From Pecten maximus (Eukaryota), in the NCBI RefSeq assembly GCF_902652985.1, contig NC_047033.1:25482001-25546000 (forward strand): a DNA stretch of 64,000 nucleotides. The letters run 5' to 3'. Position 1 is the stretch's first letter, and each line of letters opens with the position of its first letter. A program made the position numbers and the translations under genes. Below, piece after piece: positions 6,166-35,567 of the stretch. Below the pieces are notes generated by a model. The model had not been told where the DNA came from. It did no database searches and worked only from the letters and a program-made list of their open reading frames with translations.

Positions 6166-8108
6166 ATTTACACAACGAAACAATGCAGCGACAAACTCAT
6201 ATACACTGTATACGATATAAAATAGCCATGTACGGTAATCTTCTTTTTCTGGATACTACGAATTGAAAGAGAAAGTCATTGTTGATAATCGGTATCAGAT
6301 AATGAATGGACATTTCATTGTTAGAAAAACAAATCGTTGCATAACAGAAATTTTAGAATTTGCTCCGACTGGCGAAACAATGTTGGTATTTGAAATAACC
6401 ATGCAGTATTCAGCCACAGGCACGGGCATGGAATAATTTCAAACATCAGTGAAACAAAAAAAAATTAAGAAGCGATACAACATCTTTCTATATCATTATA
6501 TTCATGTACTATGTACACAGATTGACGAATATTAGGTTGCATATCATACACTGGAAGACGTAAGTATTATAGTCGTATAAAAGTTTTTAATTACTTGTTT
6601 TGATGAAATTTTAATTTCATAATTATAACAGTAGAATGGAGTTACAATGACGTAATTTAGAAAACATTGTGTTCCGATACTGATCATTAATACGCGTATT
6701 ACATTACCTTCTATGTGGTATTAATTAGTACGTACATAAAGGCTTTAAGAATAATCAAATTATATTTGTACCCAACACAAAATATCCGGATATCTGGCCA
6801 TCAAACCAGCTTGATATGATTTTTTGTATTCACAAAGAGGAAAGATAAACCTTAAATCTATGAAATATACATATTCTTATTTGCGCAAAAAGTGTTTGTT
6901 AATTGCAATGAATATTCATTAAATGACCGTAAACTTGCATCACCTGGCTATTCGCAACTTTCAAATGAGTCAATTTTAATTCACAATCCGGTCAAAACGC
7001 ACAGCGATCTATTTTGCTACTGTGAAAATCACTGTGGTCACGTGACATTTTACCTGTATTTTCAGCCCAGATTATCGCTGTACGAACGACCATACTTCTT
7101 TACAGGACGACAATCAAAACTGACTTCAAATCCCTACATCGTAACCAGCAAGGTGATTACAGGTATTTATACACATGTGACTTCCTTGATATCATATAGT
7201 TAGTACTACAGATCCGTGTAATCAAAGTTTACAGCCATATTGGCCATATTCCCGGTGGCAGTTTTCCTTTCACGACGTTGTTTTCTGAAAGTCAACCTAA
7301 AGATCGTTACTCGTAGCATATTCCGGGAAACGTTTTCCATCAGTCATTGATAGAAAGATTGTTGACAAATTATTAGTAAGATGCATTGATTTGAAATATG
7401 TGATGTTAAAACAACCTAATCATTGATGGTTTCCAATTGGTTTTGGGACCTAATGGGTAAATTGAAATTGACGAACATTAATTAGGTCTTGAAAACACAC
7501 GGTACTCAGTATCATTTAAGTATCGGAAAAGAGGTTATTCACTTATATATATATTCAAGTTTTATGAACTTGAATTATTCGTGGAAGCTTAAAATTATTC
7601 CGAGAACTTAATTGCATTTGTGGGCGTTCAAATGTGTTCCAGGAAACTTAAACTATTTCATGGATCTTAAATGTATTCATGGGATCTTAATTTTATTCGG
7701 GGATCCAAAAACGTATCCTAGGGAACTTAAATAAATTACCGGAATCTTGAATACATTTCCAGGAGCTTCAATGTATTCCAAGATCAATAATGCATTCCTG
7801 GGAGCTTAAAGTATTACGGGAACTTAAAATATATTCTCGGGAACTTACAGAATTTTTTTTTGGGAGCTTAAATGTATTCCGTGATCTTATATGTATTCCG
7901 GGATTTTAAATGTATTCCGGGATATATATTAAATGTATTGCTTAAGCTAAATGGTATTCCCATGAACTAAAATGCATAAAATGTAACTTGCATGTATTCT
8001 TGGAGTCTTGGAGTACATCATGTATTTCATATTTCAAGTTGAATTATTTAATGTTTTATATTGGTCATGATATTTATACTGTATGTATTTTCCAGTGGAT
8101 TACCAACT

Positions 8109-11545: not shown

Positions 11546-13483
11546 TTACACAACGAAACAATGCAGCGACAAACTCATATACACTGTATACGATATAAAA
11601 TAGCCATGTACGGTAATCTTCTTTTTCTGGATACTACGAATTGAAAGAGAAAGTCATTGTTGATAATCGGTATCAGATAATGAATGGACGTTTCATTGTT
11701 AGAAAAACAAATCGTTGCATAACAGAAATTTTAGAATTTGCTCCGACTGGCGAAACAATGTTGGTATTTGAAATAACCATGCAGTATTCAGCCACAGGCA
11801 CGGGCATGGAATAATTTCAAACATCAGTGAAACAAAACAAAATTAAGAAGCGATTCAACAACATCTTTATAATCATTATATTCATGTACTATGTACACAG
11901 ATTGACGAATATTAGGTTGCATATCATACACTGGAAGACGTAAGTATTATAGTCGTATAAAAGTTTTTAATTACTTGTTTTGATGAAATTTTAATTTCAT
12001 AATTATAACAGTAGAATGGAGTTACAATGACGTAATTTATAAAACATTGTGTTCCGATACTGATCATTAATACGCGTATTACATTACCTTCTATGTGGTA
12101 TTAATTAGTACGTACATAAACGCTTTAAGAATAATCAAATTATATTTGTACCCAACACAAAATATCCGGATATCTGGCCATCAAACCAGCTTGATATGAT
12201 TTTTTGTATTCACAAAGAGGAGAGATAAACCTTAAATCTATGAAATATACATATTCTTATTTGCGCAAAAAGTGTTTGTTAATTGCAATGAATATTCATT
12301 AAATGACCGTAAACTTGCATCACCTGGCTATTCGCAACTTTCAAATGAGTCAATTTTAATTCACAATCCGGTCAAAACGCACAGCGATCTATTTTGCTAC
12401 TGTGAAAATCACTGTGGTCACGTGACATTTTACCTGTATGTTTTAGCCCAGATTATCGCTGTGCGAACGACCATACTTCTTTACAGGACGACAACCAAAA
12501 CTGACTTCAAATCCCTACATCGTAACCAGCAAGGTGATTGCAGGTAATTATACACATGTGACTTCCTTGATATCATATAGTTAGTACTACAGATCCGTGT
12601 AATCAAAGTTTACAGCCATATTGGCCATATTCCTGGTGGCAGTTTTCCTTTCACGACGTTGTTTTCTGAAAGTCAACCTAAAGATAGTTACTCGTAGCAT
12701 ATTCCGGGAAACGTTTTCCATCAGTCATTGATAGAAAGATTGTTGACGAATTATTAGTAAGATGCATTGATTTGAATTATGTGATGTTAAAACAACCTAA
12801 TCATTGATGGTTTCCAATTGGTTTTGGGACCTAATGGGTAAATTGAAATTGACGAACATTAATTAGGTCTTGAAAACACACGGTACTCAGTATAATTTAA
12901 GTATCGGAAAAGAGGTTATTCACTTAAATATATTCAAGTTTTATGAACTTGGATTATTCGTGGAAGCTTAAACTTATTCCGAGAACTTAATTGCAATTGT
13001 GGGCGTTCAAATGTGTTCCAGGAAACTTAAACTATTTCATGGATCTTAAATGTATTCATGGGATCTTAATTTTATTCGGGGATCCAAAAACGTATCTTAG
13101 GGAACTTAAATAAATTACCGGAATCTTGAATGCATTTCCAGAAGCTTCAATGTATTCCAAGATCAATAATGCATTCTTGGGAGCTTAAAGTATTACGGGA
13201 ACTTAAATATATTCTCGGGAGCTTACAGATTTTTTTGGGGGGGAGCTTGAATGTATTCCGTGATCTTATATGTATTCCGGGATTTTAAATATATTCCGGG
13301 ATATTAAATGTATTGCTTAATCTAAATGGTATTCCCATGAACTAAAATGCATAAAATGTAACTTGTATGTATTCTTGGAGTCTTGGAGTACATCATGTAT
13401 TTCATATTTCAAGTTGAATTATTTAATGTTTTAAATTGGTCATGATATTTATACTGTATATATTTTCCAGTGGATTACCAACT

Positions 13484-25172: not shown

Positions 25173-27894
25173 TTTACACAAAAAAACGATACACCGACAA
25201 ACTCATATACACTGTATACGGTATAAAATAGCCATGTAAGGATACCTTCTTTTTCTGGATACTACGAATTGAAAGAGAAAGTCATTGTTGATAATCGGTA
25301 TCAGATAATGAATGGACATTTCATTGTTATGAGGAGAAAAAAACTCATTTCCTAACAGAAATTTTAGAATTTGATCCGCCTGGCGAAACAATGTCGACAT
25401 ATTTGAAATAGCCATGCAGTATTCAGCCACAGGCACGGGCGTGAAATAATTTCAAACATCGGTTGAGTTTGTGCGCTGTATGAAAAGTGAAACAAAAAAA
25501 ATTAAGAAGCGATACAACAACATCTTTTTAAACCAGACTTCGTTTTTAAGTGCTCCATGTTGAACCCCGGTGCTTTCACTTTAGAAACCCCGCGCCGTGG
25601 TGGGGGTTTTACACGGTGATATACCCCCAGCCCAAACACACAAGGACTTAAATCTCAGGTGAAGTTTGACAATGTCATACATGTCCTAGTTTACAAAATA
25701 TGATTTACATATACTGGGTTTAATAGATGTTGCATATACAGCATTGTATACAGAAAACTGACAACTCAAATGCAGTCTCACGTAATTAGATATGGAGTCC
25801 CGTACACAGCAGAAAATTGAAATCAACACAAACAAAGTCGCGGTACTAACTCAGGTCATTAAGGTCTCCCATTAGCTTGGTGGGAGGATGTCGACTTAGA
25901 TAGCAAAAGGCCACTAAGTTAAGTCTCAAGTATAAGTGTTGCATATTCCAAATTTATTCCTATTCAATTAAAACATGTATAATTCAAAATCGATTTGATA
26001 CTGTAGGCATGATATCACATGCTCTTTTTCATTACTGAACATTGGTAGGAGGATCATGACTTAATCACAGGGACAACATTCCCAACTCACGTATGGACGT
26101 AGGTTTTGAGTTCGTGCCGAGTCCCTGAAGCAGCATTCCAGAACTCAATTATAGTTGAGATTCATACTTTACCGATAGCCTTCAAAACTTCCGCTACCGT
26201 CAAACAGACATGGCACAAAACGAAATATAGGTGCTGTCGACAAGTTTTCTGATTGTCGATACGCAGGTTCCATAGTTTGTCTATCATATATACACAGATC
26301 CATGAATCTGGGTAACACACCACACACTAAAAGACGTAAGTATTAGAGTTTTTTTTAAAAGTCTTTATACGTAGTTTAGATAAAATGTTAATAATATGAT
26401 TACTATAGTAGAATGAAGTTACAATGACGTAATTTAGAAAACATTGTGTTCGGAAACTGATCATTAACACGCCTATAACATTACCTTCTGTGTTGTATTA
26501 ATTAGTACGTACATTAACGCTTTAAGGATAATCGAATTATATTTGTACCCAAAACAAAATATCCGGATATCTGGCCATCAAACCAGCGTGATATGATTCT
26601 TTATTCATAAAGAGGTATGGCACATATTGGTCTGTTTCGAACTAACGGGGACAGTATTGAGAATAAAAAAATAAATGTTAAAAACTGACTGTTTGAAAAC
26701 GAACCTTAAATCTATAAAATATTGATATTCTTTTCTGCGAAAAAATTCCGTAAAGTTGCATCATTTGGCTATTTGCATCTTTCGAATATGTCAATTTTAC
26801 TTCACAATCTGTTCAAAACGCACAGCCACTGTGAAAATCACTGGGGTCATGTGATATTTCACCTGTACTTTTTTTGTGCAGATTATCGCTGTACGAACGA
26901 CCATACCTCTTTACAGGACGATATATATATATTGACTTCAAATTCCAACATCGTAACCAGCAAGGTGATTACAGGTAATTATACACATGTGACTTCCTTG
27001 ATATCATATAGTTCGTACTACAGATCCGTGTAATCAAAGTTTACAGCCATATTGGCCATATTCCTGGTGGCAGTTTTCCTTTCACGACGTTGTTTTCTGA
27101 AAGTCAACCTAAAGATCGTTACTCGTAGCATATTCCGGGAAACGTTTTCCATCAGTCATTGATAGAAAGATTGTTGACGAATTATTAGTAAGAGGCATTG
27201 ATCTGAATTATGTGATGTTAAAACAACCTAATCATTGATGGTTTCCAATTGGTTTTGGGACCTAATGGGTAAATTGAAATTGACGAACATTAATTAGGTC
27301 TTGAAAACACACGGTACTCAGTATAATTTAAGTATCGGAAAAGAGGTTATTCACTTAAATATATTCAAGTTTTATGAACTTGAATTATTCATGGAAGCTT
27401 AAACTTATTCCGAGAACTTAATTGCAATTGTGGGCGTTCAAATGTGTTCCAGGAAACTTAAACTATTTCATGGATCTTAAATGTATTCATGGGATTTTAA
27501 TTTTATTCGGGGATCCAAAAACGTATCCTAGGGAACTTAAATAAATTACCGGAATCTTGAATGCATTTTCAGGAGCTTCAATGTATTCCAAGATCAATAA
27601 TGCATTCCTGGGAGCTTAAAGGATTACGGGAACTTAAATATATTCTCGGGAACTTACAGAATTTTTTTGGGGGAGCATAAATGTATTCCGGGATTTTCAA
27701 TATATTCCGGGATATTAAATGTATTGCTTAATCTAAATAGTATTCCCATGAACTAAAATGCATAAAATGTAACTTGCATGTATTCTTGGAGTCTTGGAGT
27801 ACATCATGTATTTCATATTTCAAGTTGAATTATTTAATGTTTTATATTGGTCATGATATTTATACTGTATATATTTTCCAGTGGATTACCAACT

Positions 27895-32352: not shown

Positions 32353-33134
32353 AAGCCAATGAGTTGCAGTTATAATCATGGACTGAAGCAGTATTCCAGC
32401 GCTTAATTGATAATTGTCTTATAGAATAATTCCTTAATTTTACCATTGGACTTCAAAACTCGCCGTATCGTCAACAGACGTGGCACAAAAATGTGAAGTT
32501 GCTATATGTTTCCCACTTGTTGACACAGAGGTTCCGTAGTTTAACTGATTCGTGTATCTGGGATGACATACCGAACAAAAACAGACGTAAGTATTGCAGT
32601 TTAATTACCTAGCTATGTGGCTTTTATTTTGTAAATATCATGATCACAAGTAGAATGAAGACACTACGATGTAATTTAGAAAACATTGTATTCGGATATT
32701 GACTATTAGCATGCGTCTTACGTTGTGTTCAATGTTTTATAAAGTAGACCGTACATATACGTTCTGAGGCGAGTCGAAATATGTATGTGTACCCAACATA
32801 AGATATGTTAATGTCATCCACCTAGATCTTCACTCTTATCATATTCCGGGAAACGTTTTCCACCAGTCCTTGATCGAAAGATTCTTGAGGAATTTTAAGA
32901 TAGATGCAATGACATGAATTATAAGAAGTTTAAACAATCTAACCGTTGATGTTTTCCTAATGATAAGGTCCTAATGGGTCAATTGAAATTGATAAATATT
33001 AAGGAGGTCTTTAAAGCACACAATGTACTCAGTCTAATTCAATTAAATTGTCAGAAAACAAGATATTTAAGTTTTATCAGCCTAAATGTATTCGTTGGAG
33101 CTTAAAATGATTCGGGGAACTTAAATGCATTTGT

Positions 33135-33183
33135 TAACGCCGCCGTAGCCGGTCCCAAGCCCGTGTTGAGAAAGGAGGAGGGG
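33135..33183 (+). ncRNA. Twister self-cleaving ribozyme core (P1 type, lacking its own 5' P1 strand)
   Basis: T^AACGCCGCCGTAGCCGGTCCCAAGCCCG...AAAGGAGGAGGGG aligns to the rice twister as recalled (U^AACACUGCCAAUGCCGGUCCCAAGCCCGGAUAAAAGUGGAGGG). The catalytic A (33136) and G (33178) and both pseudoknot pairings are present. Confidence 0.82.
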
Positions 33184-33297
33184 AACACCAATTGACAACA
33201 TCTAACAGTCACCCCGGACTAATGTTCTAACCTAGAGTCGCGAGTAGAGATTGTAACCTAAATCGAGACTTTAAACCAGCGACATCAACATCACATC
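33136..33297 (+). mobile_element. 162-bp non-autonomous retroposon headed by a twister ribozyme
   Basis: Perfect 13-bp TSD AAATGCATTTGTT (33123-33135 / 33298-33310) and (ACATC)n-like tail. The insert is absent from the paralogous sites (~7610, ~12990, ~27420). Confidence 0.88.
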
Positions 33298-33909
33298 AAA
33301 TGCATTTGTTGGAGCTTAACTGTATTCCAGGAAACTTAAAACTATTTCATGGATCTTAATTGTATTCTTGGATCTTAAATGCATTCCCTGAGATCTTAAT
33401 TGTATTCCGGTATCTAAAGCGTATTCTCTGGAAATTAAAAATACTCGTGGAAACGTAAATATATTACAGGAGTGTTGAATATAATTCCGGGAGCTTCAAT
33501 GTATTTCCGGGATCTTAAATACATCACGGGAGCTTTAATATATTCAGAAGCATAGTACAGATTTTAACAAACATGTGACATATACATTGTATCTGAAGGT
33601 GAGATAACCTTGCATTTCATTGTATTTTATCTTACACATGACATACCCTTGTTATCTACGCTGAGTATGAGTAAACTCGCAATGCAATACCACTGATAGC
33701 CTACCTAAAATATATAGCTGGTAGGACGAATATCTGACTAACATTTCAATCACAGGTATATATTTAGTATTTTATGTTGATGACCGGGTCCATGAAGTAT
33801 TGGATGTTTTACGCTGAGGCCCGCGTCATTAAAGTATCTAATTATGGTTTATGTCGATGTTTCGCGGATGATAATCATACTTATATCTATTTTCAGTGGA
33901 TTATCAACT

Positions 33910-35567
33910 ATGACCGAGTTAAGCTTCATCAACGAACCCCAGTCACAACCGATCAAATATAAGTCCATTGTTGACGTTTTCAATGAGAATGCGAGCGAGT
34001 TTCCGGAGAAGGAAATATGCATCCAGCGTTTCCCTGACGGATCTCGGCGTTCGATAACCTACAGAGAACTGAAGCAGAAGGCAGTGAGGACTGCTTCGTA
34101 CCTGATGGGTCAAGGTATTAAAGTTGGACATAAAGTAGGAATCACGGGGCCTAACTCGATAGAATGGATCATCGGGGAGCTAGCTATCCTCATAGCCGGC
34201 GCCGTAAGTGTACATCTGCCAATGTTCGAAGGGAATTTCCGGAAGACCCTCGAAGGAATACAGATTTCAGAATGTGAGTCAGTTCTACTTGATCCAGAGA
34301 ATGACGTCAAGTTTGTAAAGGACATCGAGGAATATGTAAGCAACAGTCCATCAAATGAAAGAAGTGGATCAGAGAACCTGGTCTTTGTCCTACTCCGGAA
34401 GATTGGGAAATCTATCCTACCTGACGTAGAATCAATGGAAAATTAGATGAACATCACATAGAGCGGAAACTTCCTCGAATCTTTCCAGAGACCCCGGCCA
34501 TTATTTTCATGACATCTGGTTCAACAGGAAAGCCTAAAATGGTCGAATGTACACATTTAGCATTAGTAAACACGGGATCCGCTTACATGTTCACTCGCGG
34601 TTCCGGCGAGAAAGGGGAATCATACTTCAACGATCGGCCTTTCTCCTGGATCGGAGGTAATATTATATACTGCCTACTACAGGCGGACACAAGAGTGTTT
34701 CGGGATGGCAGGATAACTGCGAAAGGAGGCGATATTATGGACCTCTGGAATATCATCATGGAAGAAAAATGCACCAGTGGTATTTTCCTGCCTTTCACCA
34801 TCTATGATATGTTGCAGAACAAAGATAAAATCGCCAAGACAGGATACCGAATGAAATCTGTCATCACTGGAGGTCAAATAATCAAAAGTAAAGAGACAGG
34901 GATTCTGGGACAGGTTTGTGAAAGTTTGTACATGTTGTATGGGTCAACAGAGGTAGGCATAGTGACTCACTGTCGAATAGACGGACGCATGGAAACTGGA
35001 CTTCTTGGGTCCGTTTTCCCCGGAGTTCAGATCAAAGTCGTTGATGAAGATTTGAACACGGTTGTTCGTGGAGAAATGGGTACACTTTTTATAAAATCAC
35101 TTTGGATGTTGAAAGGATACTTCAACGCAACAGAAGATCAAAATAAATCCATTGTAGACGGCTGGATGAATACAGGGGACGTCGGGATTCTAAGGACAGA
35201 CGGACAACTCATAATCAAAGGGAAAATGAACAATATCATCAAACGAGGCACTCTAAAAGTGCTATCGGGGGAGATTGAAGAAAGCATAGCCACAATTGCA
35301 GGCGTGAAAGATGCTGTTGTCATCGCCGTTCCAGATCCCCGGTTGTATGAAGAGGTTTGCGCATGCGTTGTGTTAGATAAACATACATCAGTTACCATAC
35401 AGGATGTTCGGACTCGCTGCGCAGAAAACCTTGGGGACAATATCGTAGGACAAGCCCCCACTTTTTATCTCGAGTTTGATACACTGCCACAACTAGGAAC
35501 GGGAAAACCGGACAAGGTCAAAATTAAACAGGACGCAATGAGCAGATTGGGCATCAATACTCAGTAA
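33910..35567 (+). pseudogene. Acyl-CoA synthetase / AMP-binding enzyme, copy 5, frameshifted
   Basis: 1-bp deletion in an A-run at ~34441 (ATGGAAAATTAGAT) gives TAG. The rest is open, with all motifs. Length 1658 bp. This could be an assembly indel. Confidence 0.8.

What the first reader, a model, noticed from the sequence alone, without database searches (positions are those of the whole stretch)
33123..33310. Tiny retroposon whose 5' end is a twister ribozyme starting exactly at the scissile bond
Seen: a 162-bp insert with a perfect 13-bp TSD and a short-repeat tail, absent from three paralogous sites in this window. Its first ~48 nt fit the twister consensus as recalled: P2 C(G)CC/GG(A)G with one mismatch, P4 CGG/CCG, pseudoknots GC/GC and CC/GG, and catalytic A33136 and G33178. 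The insert starts at AAC, which is the 3' product of U^A cleavage. Known: twisters occur at the 5' ends of RTE-clade non-LTR retrotransposons. Inference: this is a SINE-like family with no tRNA head and no Pol III promoter. It would be cut out of host read-through transcripts by its own ribozyme and mobilised in trans by a LINE (the TSD and tail are TPRT signatures).
Basis: partly seen in the sequence, partly recalled or inferred. Interest (0 to 1): 0.88.

Follow-up and report, generated by a model that had tools for sequence, protein, structure and literature searches.

The report
Twister-headed mini-retroposon of king scallop
A 160-base jumping element in the king scallop genome begins exactly where a built-in twister self-cutting RNA would cut, so it probably trims itself out of host transcripts before being copied back into DNA; this is a small protein-less version of a design already known from a flatworm LINE.

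Summary
Window 33136-33297 is a 162-bp insert with a perfect 13-bp target-site duplication, and it is absent from three paralogous sites in the window.

It belongs to a young dispersed family in this genome (Pecten maximus):
- About 100 copies, roughly 1.7% from their consensus.
- All 30 full-length copies examined start at the same AAC, next to unrelated flanks.
- 24 of 30 have 7-16-bp duplications.
- Tails are (CAACAT)n or (CAT)n.
- 5'-truncated copies carrying their own duplications exist.

The first 47 nt match Rfam twister-P1 over the whole model: 31 bits here and 39 bits for a consensus-like copy (genome-wide E 2e-4), below the curated cut-off of 67.2. Every conserved loop nucleotide is present. 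In the family consensus P2 is a perfect CUCC/GGAG. P3 is missing, and an extended P4 appears to replace it. The U^A cleavage site falls exactly at the insert's first base.

There is no tRNA head and no A or B box. I found no LINE partner sharing either end, and cleavage is untested.

The mechanism is already published for the autonomous Perere-3 LINE of Schistosoma (Liu et al. 2021). I therefore call this a new, non-autonomous, minimal variant of a known kind.

The parts
33123..33135 (+). Left copy of the 13-bp target-site duplication. Its last base (33135) is the nucleotide 5' of the predicted scissile bond.
   Evidence: Read directly. The automated search for direct repeats gave a 13-bp exact repeat abutting the element (L001).
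33136..33297 (+). The whole retroposed element: 162 bp, one copy of a family of about 100.
   Evidence: Absent from three paralogous sites.
33136..33182 (+). Twister ribozyme as its 3' cleavage product (47 nt). AA 33136-7; P2 5' strand 33138-41; GCC 33142-4; extended P4 5' strand 33146-52; loop L4 UCCCAAGC 33153-60; P4 3' strand 33161-3; bulge 33164; GUUG 33165-8; AGAAA 33169-73; P2 3' strand GGAG 33174-7; GAGGG 33178-82.
   Evidence: Rfam alignment. The minimum-energy fold of a consensus-like copy gives P2 plus an extended P4. Segment-by-segment comparison with Table 1 of PMC8501958.
33183..33186 (+). Position of the P1 3' strand (GAAC here). It varies between subfamilies, and no conserved 5' partner exists because the upstream sequence is whatever the target site supplies.
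   Evidence: marks two of the four P1 pairs as non-standard. Subfamily variants fall at consensus positions 48 and 50.
33209..33264 (+). Internal unit (period 54 bp) that is amplified into arrays of about 0.2 to 6.5 kb in other copies of the family.
   Evidence: L064, L065, L066.
33233..33274 (+). Imperfect 3' hairpin just upstream of the tail. It is a candidate recognition element for the reverse transcriptase; this role is inferred.
   Evidence: Fold of 33220-33285: -13.2 kcal/mol, z = -2.3, with 5 of 200 shuffles folding as well. The same hairpin appears in L006.
33280..33297 (+). Short-repeat tail: CAACAT-type hexamer repeats, degenerate in this copy.
   Evidence: Tails across the family are (CAACAT)n or (CAT)n of variable length.
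33298..33310 (+). Right copy of the 13-bp target-site duplication.

Best explanation
This is one copy of a young, ORF-less, LINE-dependent retroposon family of the king scallop. It is SINE-like, but it has no Pol III promoter. Its first 47 nt are a minimal twister ribozyme that lacks P1 and P3.

Proposed cycle:
1. A copy lying inside a host transcription unit is transcribed as part of a longer RNA.
2. The twister cuts between the last flank nucleotide and its own A1. This releases an RNA whose 5' end is exactly the element's first base and which still contains the whole ribozyme.
3. A LINE reverse transcriptase acting in trans primes on the CAACAT-repeat tail, possibly helped by the adjacent 3' hairpin, at a nicked target. 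It copies the RNA to its 5' end, or stops short.
4. Repair creates a 7-16-bp duplication. The new copy carries the complete ribozyme, so it can repeat the cycle wherever it is again transcribed.

Shown: the family, the constant 5' end at the scissile bond, the duplications, the tails, the truncated copies, the empty sites, and the sequence and structure fit to twister.

Inferred: actual cleavage, read-through transcription as the source of the RNA, and the identity of the LINE.
For: 1. Insert, 13-bp duplication and three empty paralogous sites.

2. Family size. End patterns of 28-29 nt find 95 5' ends and 102 3' ends, with zero hits for the reversed control patterns. The best 31 copies differ from their consensus by 1.7% on average. 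An older copy of roughly 80% identity with the same start and a 10-bp duplication also exists.

3. All 30 full-length copies start at AAC next to unrelated flanks. 24 of 30 have exact flanking repeats of 7-16 bp.

4. Truncated copies starting at element positions 8, 15, 17, 32 and 97 keep the 3' end and tail; at least two (those starting at 32 and 97) show clear duplications of their own.

5. Rfam twister-P1 matches over the full model. The U^A site lies at the element boundary. Scores are 31.1 bits for the window copy and 38.8 bits for L006 (genome-wide E 2e-4).

6. In the consensus, P2 is a perfect CUCC/GGAG. All conserved loop nucleotides are present: AA, GCC, GUCCCAAGC, AAA and GAGGG. Segment by segment the head equals the Perere-3 twisters of S. 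mansoni, apart from the missing P3 and a 4-nt insertion (Table 1 of PMC8501958).

7. That 4-nt insertion (GUUG) pairs with UAGC, the remnant of the P3 5' strand. This extends P4. The only subfamily polymorphism inside the ribozyme (position 29, U or C) sits on the bulge of that helix.

8. Literature. P3 is optional and P1 dispensable (PMC6154101). Imperfections in P1, P2 and P4 are tolerated in a mass cleavage assay (PMC11662667). Duplications abutting the AA of active twister variants head the Perere-3 LINE (PMC8501958).

9. No tRNA, no other Rfam family, no A or B box.

10. Contigs of RNA-labelled runs hold family copies embedded in longer sequence with different upstream flanks. This is compatible with co-transcription.
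Against: - The covariance score is well under Rfam's gathering score (31-39 bits against 67.2).
- Minimum-energy folds of the head are no better than shuffles. This is expected for a pseudoknotted fold, but it gives no support.
- The window copy has a G.A mismatch in P2 and does not form P2 in its minimum-energy fold, so this particular copy may cut poorly.
- The outermost Rfam P4 pair is C.U or C.C.
- No autonomous LINE with the same head, the same 3' end or the same tail was found.
- RNA evidence consists of assembled contigs only. They show uncut read-through forms, or possibly DNA carry-over, and cannot show a 5'-OH end at A1.
- Five copies have one extra T between the duplication and AAC. 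That fits untemplated addition by the reverse transcriptase. It would also fit an RNA starting one base upstream, which cleavage does not predict.
Confidence: 0.72

Rival explanations
1. Ribozyme relic. The head was inherited from a twister-headed RTE-type LINE but no longer cuts, because of the P3 deletion and the weak P4. The constant 5' end is kept because a few master copies are transcribed from a start site that coincides with A1, or lies one base upstream.
For: The score is below threshold and P3 is missing. There is an extra T before AAC in 5 copies. Cleavage has not been shown directly.
Against: - A start site coinciding to the base with the ancestral scissile bond, with no recognisable promoter, is an unlikely coincidence.
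- All conserved twister nucleotides, and P2, are intact in the consensus of a family that stayed active from about 80% to about 99% copy identity.
- The changes relative to Perere-3 twisters are structurally compensating, giving an extended P4.
- P1 and P3 are dispensable or optional in published work.
Confidence: 0.17
2. An ordinary Pol III SINE whose internal promoter happens to overlap the twister-like motif. The L4/P4 segment GTCCCAAGC differs from a loose B-box pattern at only one specified position.
For: The 150-nt consensus contains no run of four T. The resemblance to a B box was judged by eye.
Against: - No A or B box by pattern search, no tRNA by ARAGORN, and no tRNA, 5S or 7SL match in Rfam.
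- The B-box-like segment lies at +17 to +25, far from the usual spacing, and there is no A box upstream of it.
Confidence: 0.04
3. Chance resemblance to twister. The element is a plain LINE-dependent retroposon with an unrelated 5' region.
For: The score is below Rfam's gathering score, and fold z-scores are not significant.
Against: - Genome-wide E of 2e-4 for consensus-like copies.
- A full-length model match with every invariant loop nucleotide.
- Near identity, segment by segment, to validated Perere-3 twisters.
- The element's terminus falls on the one scissile bond out of about 160 possible positions.
Confidence: 0.04
4. A DNA transposon or MITE, or a segmental-duplication artefact.
For: None specific.
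Against: Variable duplication length (7-16 bp), no terminal inverted repeats, a microsatellite tail at one end only, 5'-truncated copies with duplications, and dispersal over all 19 chromosomes.
Confidence: 0.01

Closest known systems
Twister variants (T-variants) heading the Perere-3 RTE-clade LINE of Schistosoma mansoni (Liu et al. 2021, NAR, PMC8501958). A remark on truncated twisters at 5' ends across the RTE superfamily appears in PMC7761336.
   Same: - Twister at the extreme 5' end.
- Target-site duplication directly abuts the AA of the cleavage site.
- P1 is not conserved because the flank supplies it.
- Short-repeat 3' tail and insertion that is not site-specific.
- Nearly identical ribozyme segments: P2 CUCC/GGAG, GC, CCG-GUCCCAAGC-C.., AAA, GAGGG.
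   Different: - The scallop element has no ORF and is only about 150 nt plus tail, so it must borrow its enzymes.
- P3 is deleted, and a 4-nt insertion creates an extended P4.
- The tail is (CAACAT)n rather than (GTAA)n.
- The host is a mollusc.
[quoted passage not shown]
R2 SIDEs (short internally deleted elements) and NARTc/L1Tc: non-autonomous non-LTR elements that keep their parent LINE's HDV-like 5' ribozyme (reviewed in PMC6765202).
   Same: ORF-less derivatives processed from co-transcripts by a 5' self-cleaving ribozyme and mobilised in trans.
   Different: - The ribozyme class differs (HDV-like against twister).
- HDV-like ribozymes cut at their own 5' edge by design, whereas twister-P1 normally leaves its P1 5' strand behind.
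- For SIDEs and NARTc the parent LINE is known. Here it is not.
Sm-alpha SINE-like elements of schistosomes with hammerhead ribozymes, and plant and metazoan retrozymes.
   Same: Small non-coding retroelements carrying a self-cleaving ribozyme.
   Different: Sm-alpha has a Pol III promoter, and its hammerhead resolves multimers. Retrozymes use paired hammerheads and circular RNA. Here a single twister defines a linear RNA's 5' end.
Minimal twister architectures: Osa-1-4 (no P0, P3 or P5; PDB 4OJI) and the 'mini-twister' without P1 (Kosutic et al. 2015), as summarised in PMC6154101.
   Same: They show that twisters lacking P3, or lacking P1, can fold and cleave.
   Different: Those are laboratory or plant sequences studied in isolation. 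The scallop head lacks both P1 and P3 at once and is part of a mobile element.

Membership tests
Twister ribozyme, type P1 (Rfam RF03160) | Covariance-model score at or above Rfam's gathering score (67.2 bits) | tested here: not met
   31.1 bits for the window copy and 38.8 bits for the consensus-like copy L006. For scale, a canonical twister in this genome with intact P1 and P3 reaches only 62.6-66 bits. The E-values are still significant: 7.2e-5 locally and 2e-4 genome-wide.
Twister ribozyme, type P1 (Rfam RF03160) | Invariant loop nucleotides: AA 3' of the scissile bond, GC(C) after P2, L4 GUCCCAAGC, AAA before the P2 3' strand, GAGGG | tested here: met
   All are present at 33136-7, 33142-4, 33152-60, 33171-3 and 33178-82. 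They are identical in the family consensus and match the Perere-3 twisters.
Twister ribozyme, type P1 (Rfam RF03160) | P2 helix | tested here: met
   CUCC/GGAG, 4 of 4 pairs, in the family consensus. The window copy has CGCC/GGAG, 3 of 4 pairs. Between families in this genome P2 covaries: UGCU/AGCA in the 2.65-kb-unit twister.
Twister ribozyme, type P1 (Rfam RF03160) | P4 helix closing the L4 loop | tested here: met
   Two or three standard pairs in the Rfam register, with the outermost pair C.U. The minimum-energy fold of a consensus-like copy extends the helix through UAGC/GUUG with one bulged U.
Twister ribozyme, type P1 (Rfam RF03160) | Complementarity for pseudoknots T1 (L4 CC(C) with the GG(G) of GAGGG) and T2 (GC after P2 with the GC of L4) | tested here: met
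   The complementary bases are present in the sequence. The tools do not model pseudoknots, so this test is on sequence only.
Twister ribozyme, type P1 (Rfam RF03160) | P1 helix flanking the cleavage site | tested here: not met
   Upstream flanks are unrelated between copies. In the window copy 2 of 4 P1 pairs are non-standard. P1 is reported to be dispensable (PMC6154101, PMC11662667).
Twister ribozyme, type P1 (Rfam RF03160) | Site-specific self-cleavage giving a 5'-OH at A1 | not testable with these tools
   Only indirect evidence: all 30 full-length copies examined begin at A1. The available sequencing runs are assembled contigs and cannot show RNA ends.
LINE-dependent (target-primed) retroposon | Dispersed multicopy family with target-site duplications of variable length, a 3' repeat tail and 5'-truncated members | tested here: met
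   Empty paralogous sites.
LINE-dependent (target-primed) retroposon | An autonomous LINE partner sharing the 3' end or tail (and the head, if the element is an internally deleted derivative) | tested here: inconclusive
   - 3' ends: every match to the 21-29-nt 3' end that was inspected is the element itself, and the rest are at background level.
- Heads: no further twister heads with the exact core.
- Tails: the (CAACAT)n hits are coding sequence or other repeats.
- These searches needed near-exact words and were capped, so a partner with a diverged 3' end is not excluded.
SINE in the strict sense | Internal Pol III promoter derived from tRNA, 7SL or 5S | tested here: not met
   No tRNA, no Rfam match other than twister, no A or B box.
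Perere-3-type ribozyme-headed LINE | Endonuclease/reverse-transcriptase ORF downstream of the twister | tested here: not met
   The element is 162 bp with no ORF. The longer copies of 1-6.7 kb are arrays of its own 54-bp unit, not coding sequence.

The most novel reading that the evidence does not exclude
A class of 'ribozyme-SINE'. In this reading, a promoter-less, ORF-less retroposon of about 150 nt has a 47-nt twister without P1 or P3 as its only functional head. The twister replaces a Pol III promoter as the device that defines the RNA's 5' end. The element lives on host read-through transcripts and is copied by a LINE with which it shares no recognisable head or unique 3' sequence, recognition going through the hexamer tail or the 3' hairpin alone. 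It would be the smallest known natural ribozyme-processed mobile element, and it was active recently in a bivalve.
Probability: 0.45. Interest if true: 0.65.

Novelty: new variant of a known kind. Interest (0 to 1): 0.55.

Why it matters
Twister is one of the most widespread self-cleaving ribozymes, yet it has one demonstrated biological role: 5' processing of the Perere-3 LINE in a flatworm.

This family would extend that role in two ways. It takes it to a second phylum, and to a non-autonomous element so small that little more than the ribozyme, a 3' hairpin and a tail remains.

That makes it a compact natural system for several questions:
- What is the minimum a retroposon RNA needs?
- Can a twister without P1 and P3 cut next to arbitrary upstream sequence?
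- Does the retained ribozyme fold serve a second purpose, such as protecting the 5' end or recruiting the reverse transcriptase?

It also warns annotators. Rfam's gathering score misses these heads entirely: all three twister families in this genome score below it.

Tried and rejected
1. Hunt for a LINE partner by the 3' end. A 29-nt end pattern with up to 2 mismatches gave 102 hits. A 21-nt end pattern with up to 3 mismatches, plus positions set to disfavour the element itself, gave 82 hits against 19 for the reversed control. Every inspected hit that lacked a matching head about 124 bp upstream proved to be a truncated or mutated copy of the element.

2. Hunt by the head. Patterns for the exact twister core with every class of P4 closing pair, and with downstream constraints to exclude the element, found only three things: this family, a second repeat ('family B'), the 2.65-kb-unit twister, and one lone degenerate motif next to remnants of a pogo-like DNA transposon.

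3. Hunt by the tail. (CAACAT)2.7 not preceded by the element's own sequence gave three small repeat groups. All are internal to coding or other sequence and are not LINE ends.

4. Apparent long elements of 1-6.7 kb between a head and a 3' end are arrays of the element's own 54-bp unit and contain no ORFs.

5. Family B was considered as a second, independent case of 'twister at the 5' end'. I rejected this because its A-rich upstream flank is conserved between copies, so the twister is internal there.

6. L067/L085, where element positions 1-65 are joined to the 3' part of a LINE ORF, was considered as a template-switch chimera that might name the partner. No duplication and no remainder of the element was found within 1.9 kb, so this is left open.

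7. RNA evidence. Only Logan contigs were on offer. They show copies embedded in longer contigs and very high word depth in one run of uncertain type. They give nothing about RNA ends.

8. Minimum-energy folding as a test of the ribozyme is not informative, with z between +0.4 and +1.3, as expected for a pseudoknotted fold.

10. One fetched locus (L066) runs into an assembly gap written as N. It was left as it is.

Full report
THE OBSERVATION

In the window, the 13-bp string aaatgcatttgtt occurs at 33123-33135 and again at 33298-33310. It encloses 162 bp that end in a degenerate CAACAT-type repeat.

I joined the two flanks with the insert removed. That construct aligns without a break, at about 70% identity, to three other places in the window: about 7379-7836, 12760-13214 and 27191-27645. 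These are the upstream regions of paralogous genes. The window carries at least five tandem AMP-binding (acyl-CoA-synthetase-like) genes on the + strand, each preceded by 27-32-bp minisatellites.

THE RIBOZYME MATCH

Rfam's default scan of the window finds nothing. A scan of 33000-33450 at the E-value threshold finds twister-P1 (RF03160) at 33131-33186 on the + strand. The match covers model positions 1-68 of 68, at 31.1 bits and E 7.2e-5, against a gathering score of 67.2.

The alignment deletes P3 and inserts four bases between P4 and the AAA. It places the U^A cleavage site between 33135 and 33136. The insert therefore starts with the exact 3' cleavage product.

THE FAMILY

The genome is 918,306,378 bp in 3,983 scaffolds. 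Its scaffold lengths equal the maximum, N50 and N90 published for Pecten maximus (PMC7191990).

Copy number and age:
- A DNA search returned 41 scored copies at 93-100% identity, out of 161 candidates.
- End patterns count 95 heads and 102 3' ends, with no hits to the reversed controls.
- The best 31 copies differ from their consensus by 1.7% on average.

Ends of the copies:
- All 30 full-length copies fetched begin with AAC directly after unrelated flank. 24 have exact flanking repeats of 7-16 bp.
- Tails are (CAACAT)n or (CAT)n of variable length.
- Copies that lacked a head in the pattern search are mostly 5'-truncated members. They start at element positions 8, 15, 17, 32 and 97 and keep the 3' end and tail; those starting at 32 and 97 show clear duplications of their own.
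- An older copy of roughly 80% identity has the same start and a 10-bp duplication with one mismatch.

These are the standard marks of target-primed reverse transcription by a LINE enzyme.

WHAT THE CONSENSUS ADDS

Position 4 is T in the family and G only in the window copy. In the consensus, P2 is therefore a perfect CUCC/GGAG. A consensus-like copy scores 38.8 bits, with E 2e-4 for the whole genome.

I compared the head segment by segment with the S. mansoni twisters listed in Table 1 of Liu et al. 2021. It has the same P2, the same GC, the same CCG-GUCCCAAGC-C.. segment, the same AAA, the same GGAG and the same GAGGG.

The differences are three:
- P3 is reduced to GUAG, apparently the start of the P3 5' strand CUGUAGC.
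- GUUG is inserted after P4.
- No conserved P1 follows.

In the minimum-energy fold of a consensus-like copy, the remnant UAGC pairs with the inserted GUUG. This lengthens P4 to seven pairs with one bulged U.

Four variants are shared by several copies and so arose in lineages that stayed active. They lie at that bulge (position 29), just after GAGGG (positions 48 and 50), and in the body (position 66). None touches a conserved twister nucleotide or pair. With so few variants this is consistent with selection on the ribozyme but does not prove it.

Published work supports the plausibility of such a head:
- P3 occurs in 78% of twisters and is optional, and P1 is dispensable for cleavage (PMC6154101).
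- A mass assay of natural twisters found imperfections in P1, P2 and P4 well tolerated (PMC11662667).

WHAT THE ELEMENT IS NOT

- There is no tRNA and no other Rfam family at E up to 10.
- There is no A or B box.
- There is no ORF and there are no inverted terminal repeats.
- The longer 'elements' suggested by widely spaced head and 3'-end hits (1.0, 1.1, 2.7 and 6.7 kb) are copies in which an internal 54-bp unit (consensus 74-129, window 33209-33264) has been amplified into long arrays. They contain no ORF of 80 aa or more.

THE MISSING PARTNER

I looked for an autonomous LINE in three ways, each limited to near-exact words by the tools.

1. By 3' end. All inspected matches to the last 21-29 nt are the element itself, and the remainder equal the background of the reversed control.
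2. By head. Exact-core twisters in this genome fall into this family, a second repeat ('family B', 48-53 bits), a 2.65-kb tandem unit carrying a canonical twister (62.6-66 bits), and one lone degenerate motif.
3. By tail. (CAACAT) runs outside the element are coding or other repeats.

Family B's twister is almost identical to the Perere-3 type. Its upstream flank is conserved between copies, so it is not a second case of a terminal twister.

The partner is therefore unknown. It may share only the tail or the hairpin, or it may have a diverged 3' end. Notes from this scan mention RTE-X and I/Nimb-type LINEs in this genome. I could not test these.

RNA

Only assembled contigs of public runs were available. 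In four runs, one of them a declared RNA-seq library, family copies lie inside longer contigs with several different upstream continuations at 33136.

That is what read-through transcription would give. DNA carry-over is not excluded, and contigs cannot show RNA ends.

MECHANISM AND STANDING

The simplest account is the one published for Perere-3 (PMC8501958). It is also noted for the RTE superfamily (PMC7761336). In that account a co-transcript is cut by the 5' twister, the processed RNA is reverse-transcribed at a nicked target, and the new duplication abuts the AA.

What is new here:
- The element is non-autonomous and tiny.
- The ribozyme lacks both P1 and P3, with an extended P4 that appears to compensate.
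- The host is a mollusc.

Non-autonomous elements headed by a ribozyme are known for HDV-like ribozymes (R2 SIDEs, NARTc) and for hammerheads (Sm-alpha, retrozymes) (PMC6765202). In the searchable literature I found no description of a twister-headed ORF-less retroposon. Liu et al. note only that 18.6% of their T-variants had no conserved domain downstream.

I rate this a new variant of a known kind, with moderate interest. My confidence in the full mechanism is about 0.7. The family, the boundaries and the twister homology are close to certain.

One detail remains unexplained. Five copies have a single extra T between the duplication and AAC. This fits untemplated addition of A to the cDNA end. 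It would also fit an RNA that starts one base upstream.

Noticed in passing
L031-L062 (for example G000:C2:15327304-15332666, G000:C63:19279-27399); twister at L031:1501-1562: A canonical twister-P1 with intact P1 and P3 scores 62.6-66 bits, just under Rfam's cut-off. It occurs at 49 or more places, often in tandem units of about 2.5-2.7 kb that have no ORF of 150 aa or more. The unit also holds a tRNA-like gene about 340 bp downstream and 27-bp inverted minisatellites. In L031, 5S rRNA copies lie on the other strand. Its upstream sequence is conserved, so the ribozyme is internal to the unit.
   Followed up: partly
L087:134-560 and L092-L099: 'Family B' is a repeat of about 420 bp or more whose twister (48-53 bits) is almost identical to the S. 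mansoni Perere-3 twisters and shares AACUCCGCC and P2 with the element studied here. It has about 6 long copies plus 5'-shortened ones, and it ends in ..T8ACACCCCTG. The A-rich sequence upstream of the twister is conserved between copies, so its true 5' boundary lies further upstream and was not found.
   Followed up: partly
L064 (G000:C2:53139255-53141948), L065 (G000:C3006:645085-651772), L066: Copies of the element in which the internal 54-bp unit is amplified to about 47 and about 120 tandem units (2.5 and 6.5 kb), with intact head and tail at the two ends. This is a retroposon-born minisatellite. L066 runs into an assembly gap (N), which was left as it is.
   Followed up: yes
L088:114-192 (G000:C11:23695513-23695591): A lone 79-nt twister-like motif (40.6 bits) with a poor P2. 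It lies after an A-rich stretch and upstream of remnants of a pogo/Tigger-like DDE transposase.
   Followed up: partly
window 2627-35567, + strand: A tandem array of at least five apparently intron-poor AMP-binding (acyl-CoA-synthetase-like) genes, each preceded by 27-32-bp minisatellite arrays. The copy downstream of the insert (33844-35567) is split into two ORFs. The insert lies about 550 bp upstream of it in the same orientation.
   Followed up: partly
L005, L006, L011, L016, L021 (5' junctions, about locus position 1500): There is one extra T between the target-site duplication and the element's first A. L022/L023 have an extra G and L026 an extra C. This probably reflects untemplated addition by the reverse transcriptase, but it was not tested.
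   Followed up: no
L067 + L085 (G000:C12:32027600-32029530, - strand): Element positions 1-65 are joined directly to the 3' part of a LINE ORF (a C-terminal Cys/His knuckle, with a frameshift). No duplication and no remainder of the element was found within 1.9 kb. This could be a template-switch chimera or a rearrangement.
   Followed up: partly
L087:1694-2433: An unrelated repeat of about 740 bp at 93-96% identity, with 916 first-look candidates in the genome.
   Followed up: no
G000:C11:5517710-5521497: Four copies of the element lie within 4 kb, two of them only 14 bp apart (L019), next to C-rich and CA-rich simple repeats. This is probably a local duplication.
   Followed up: no
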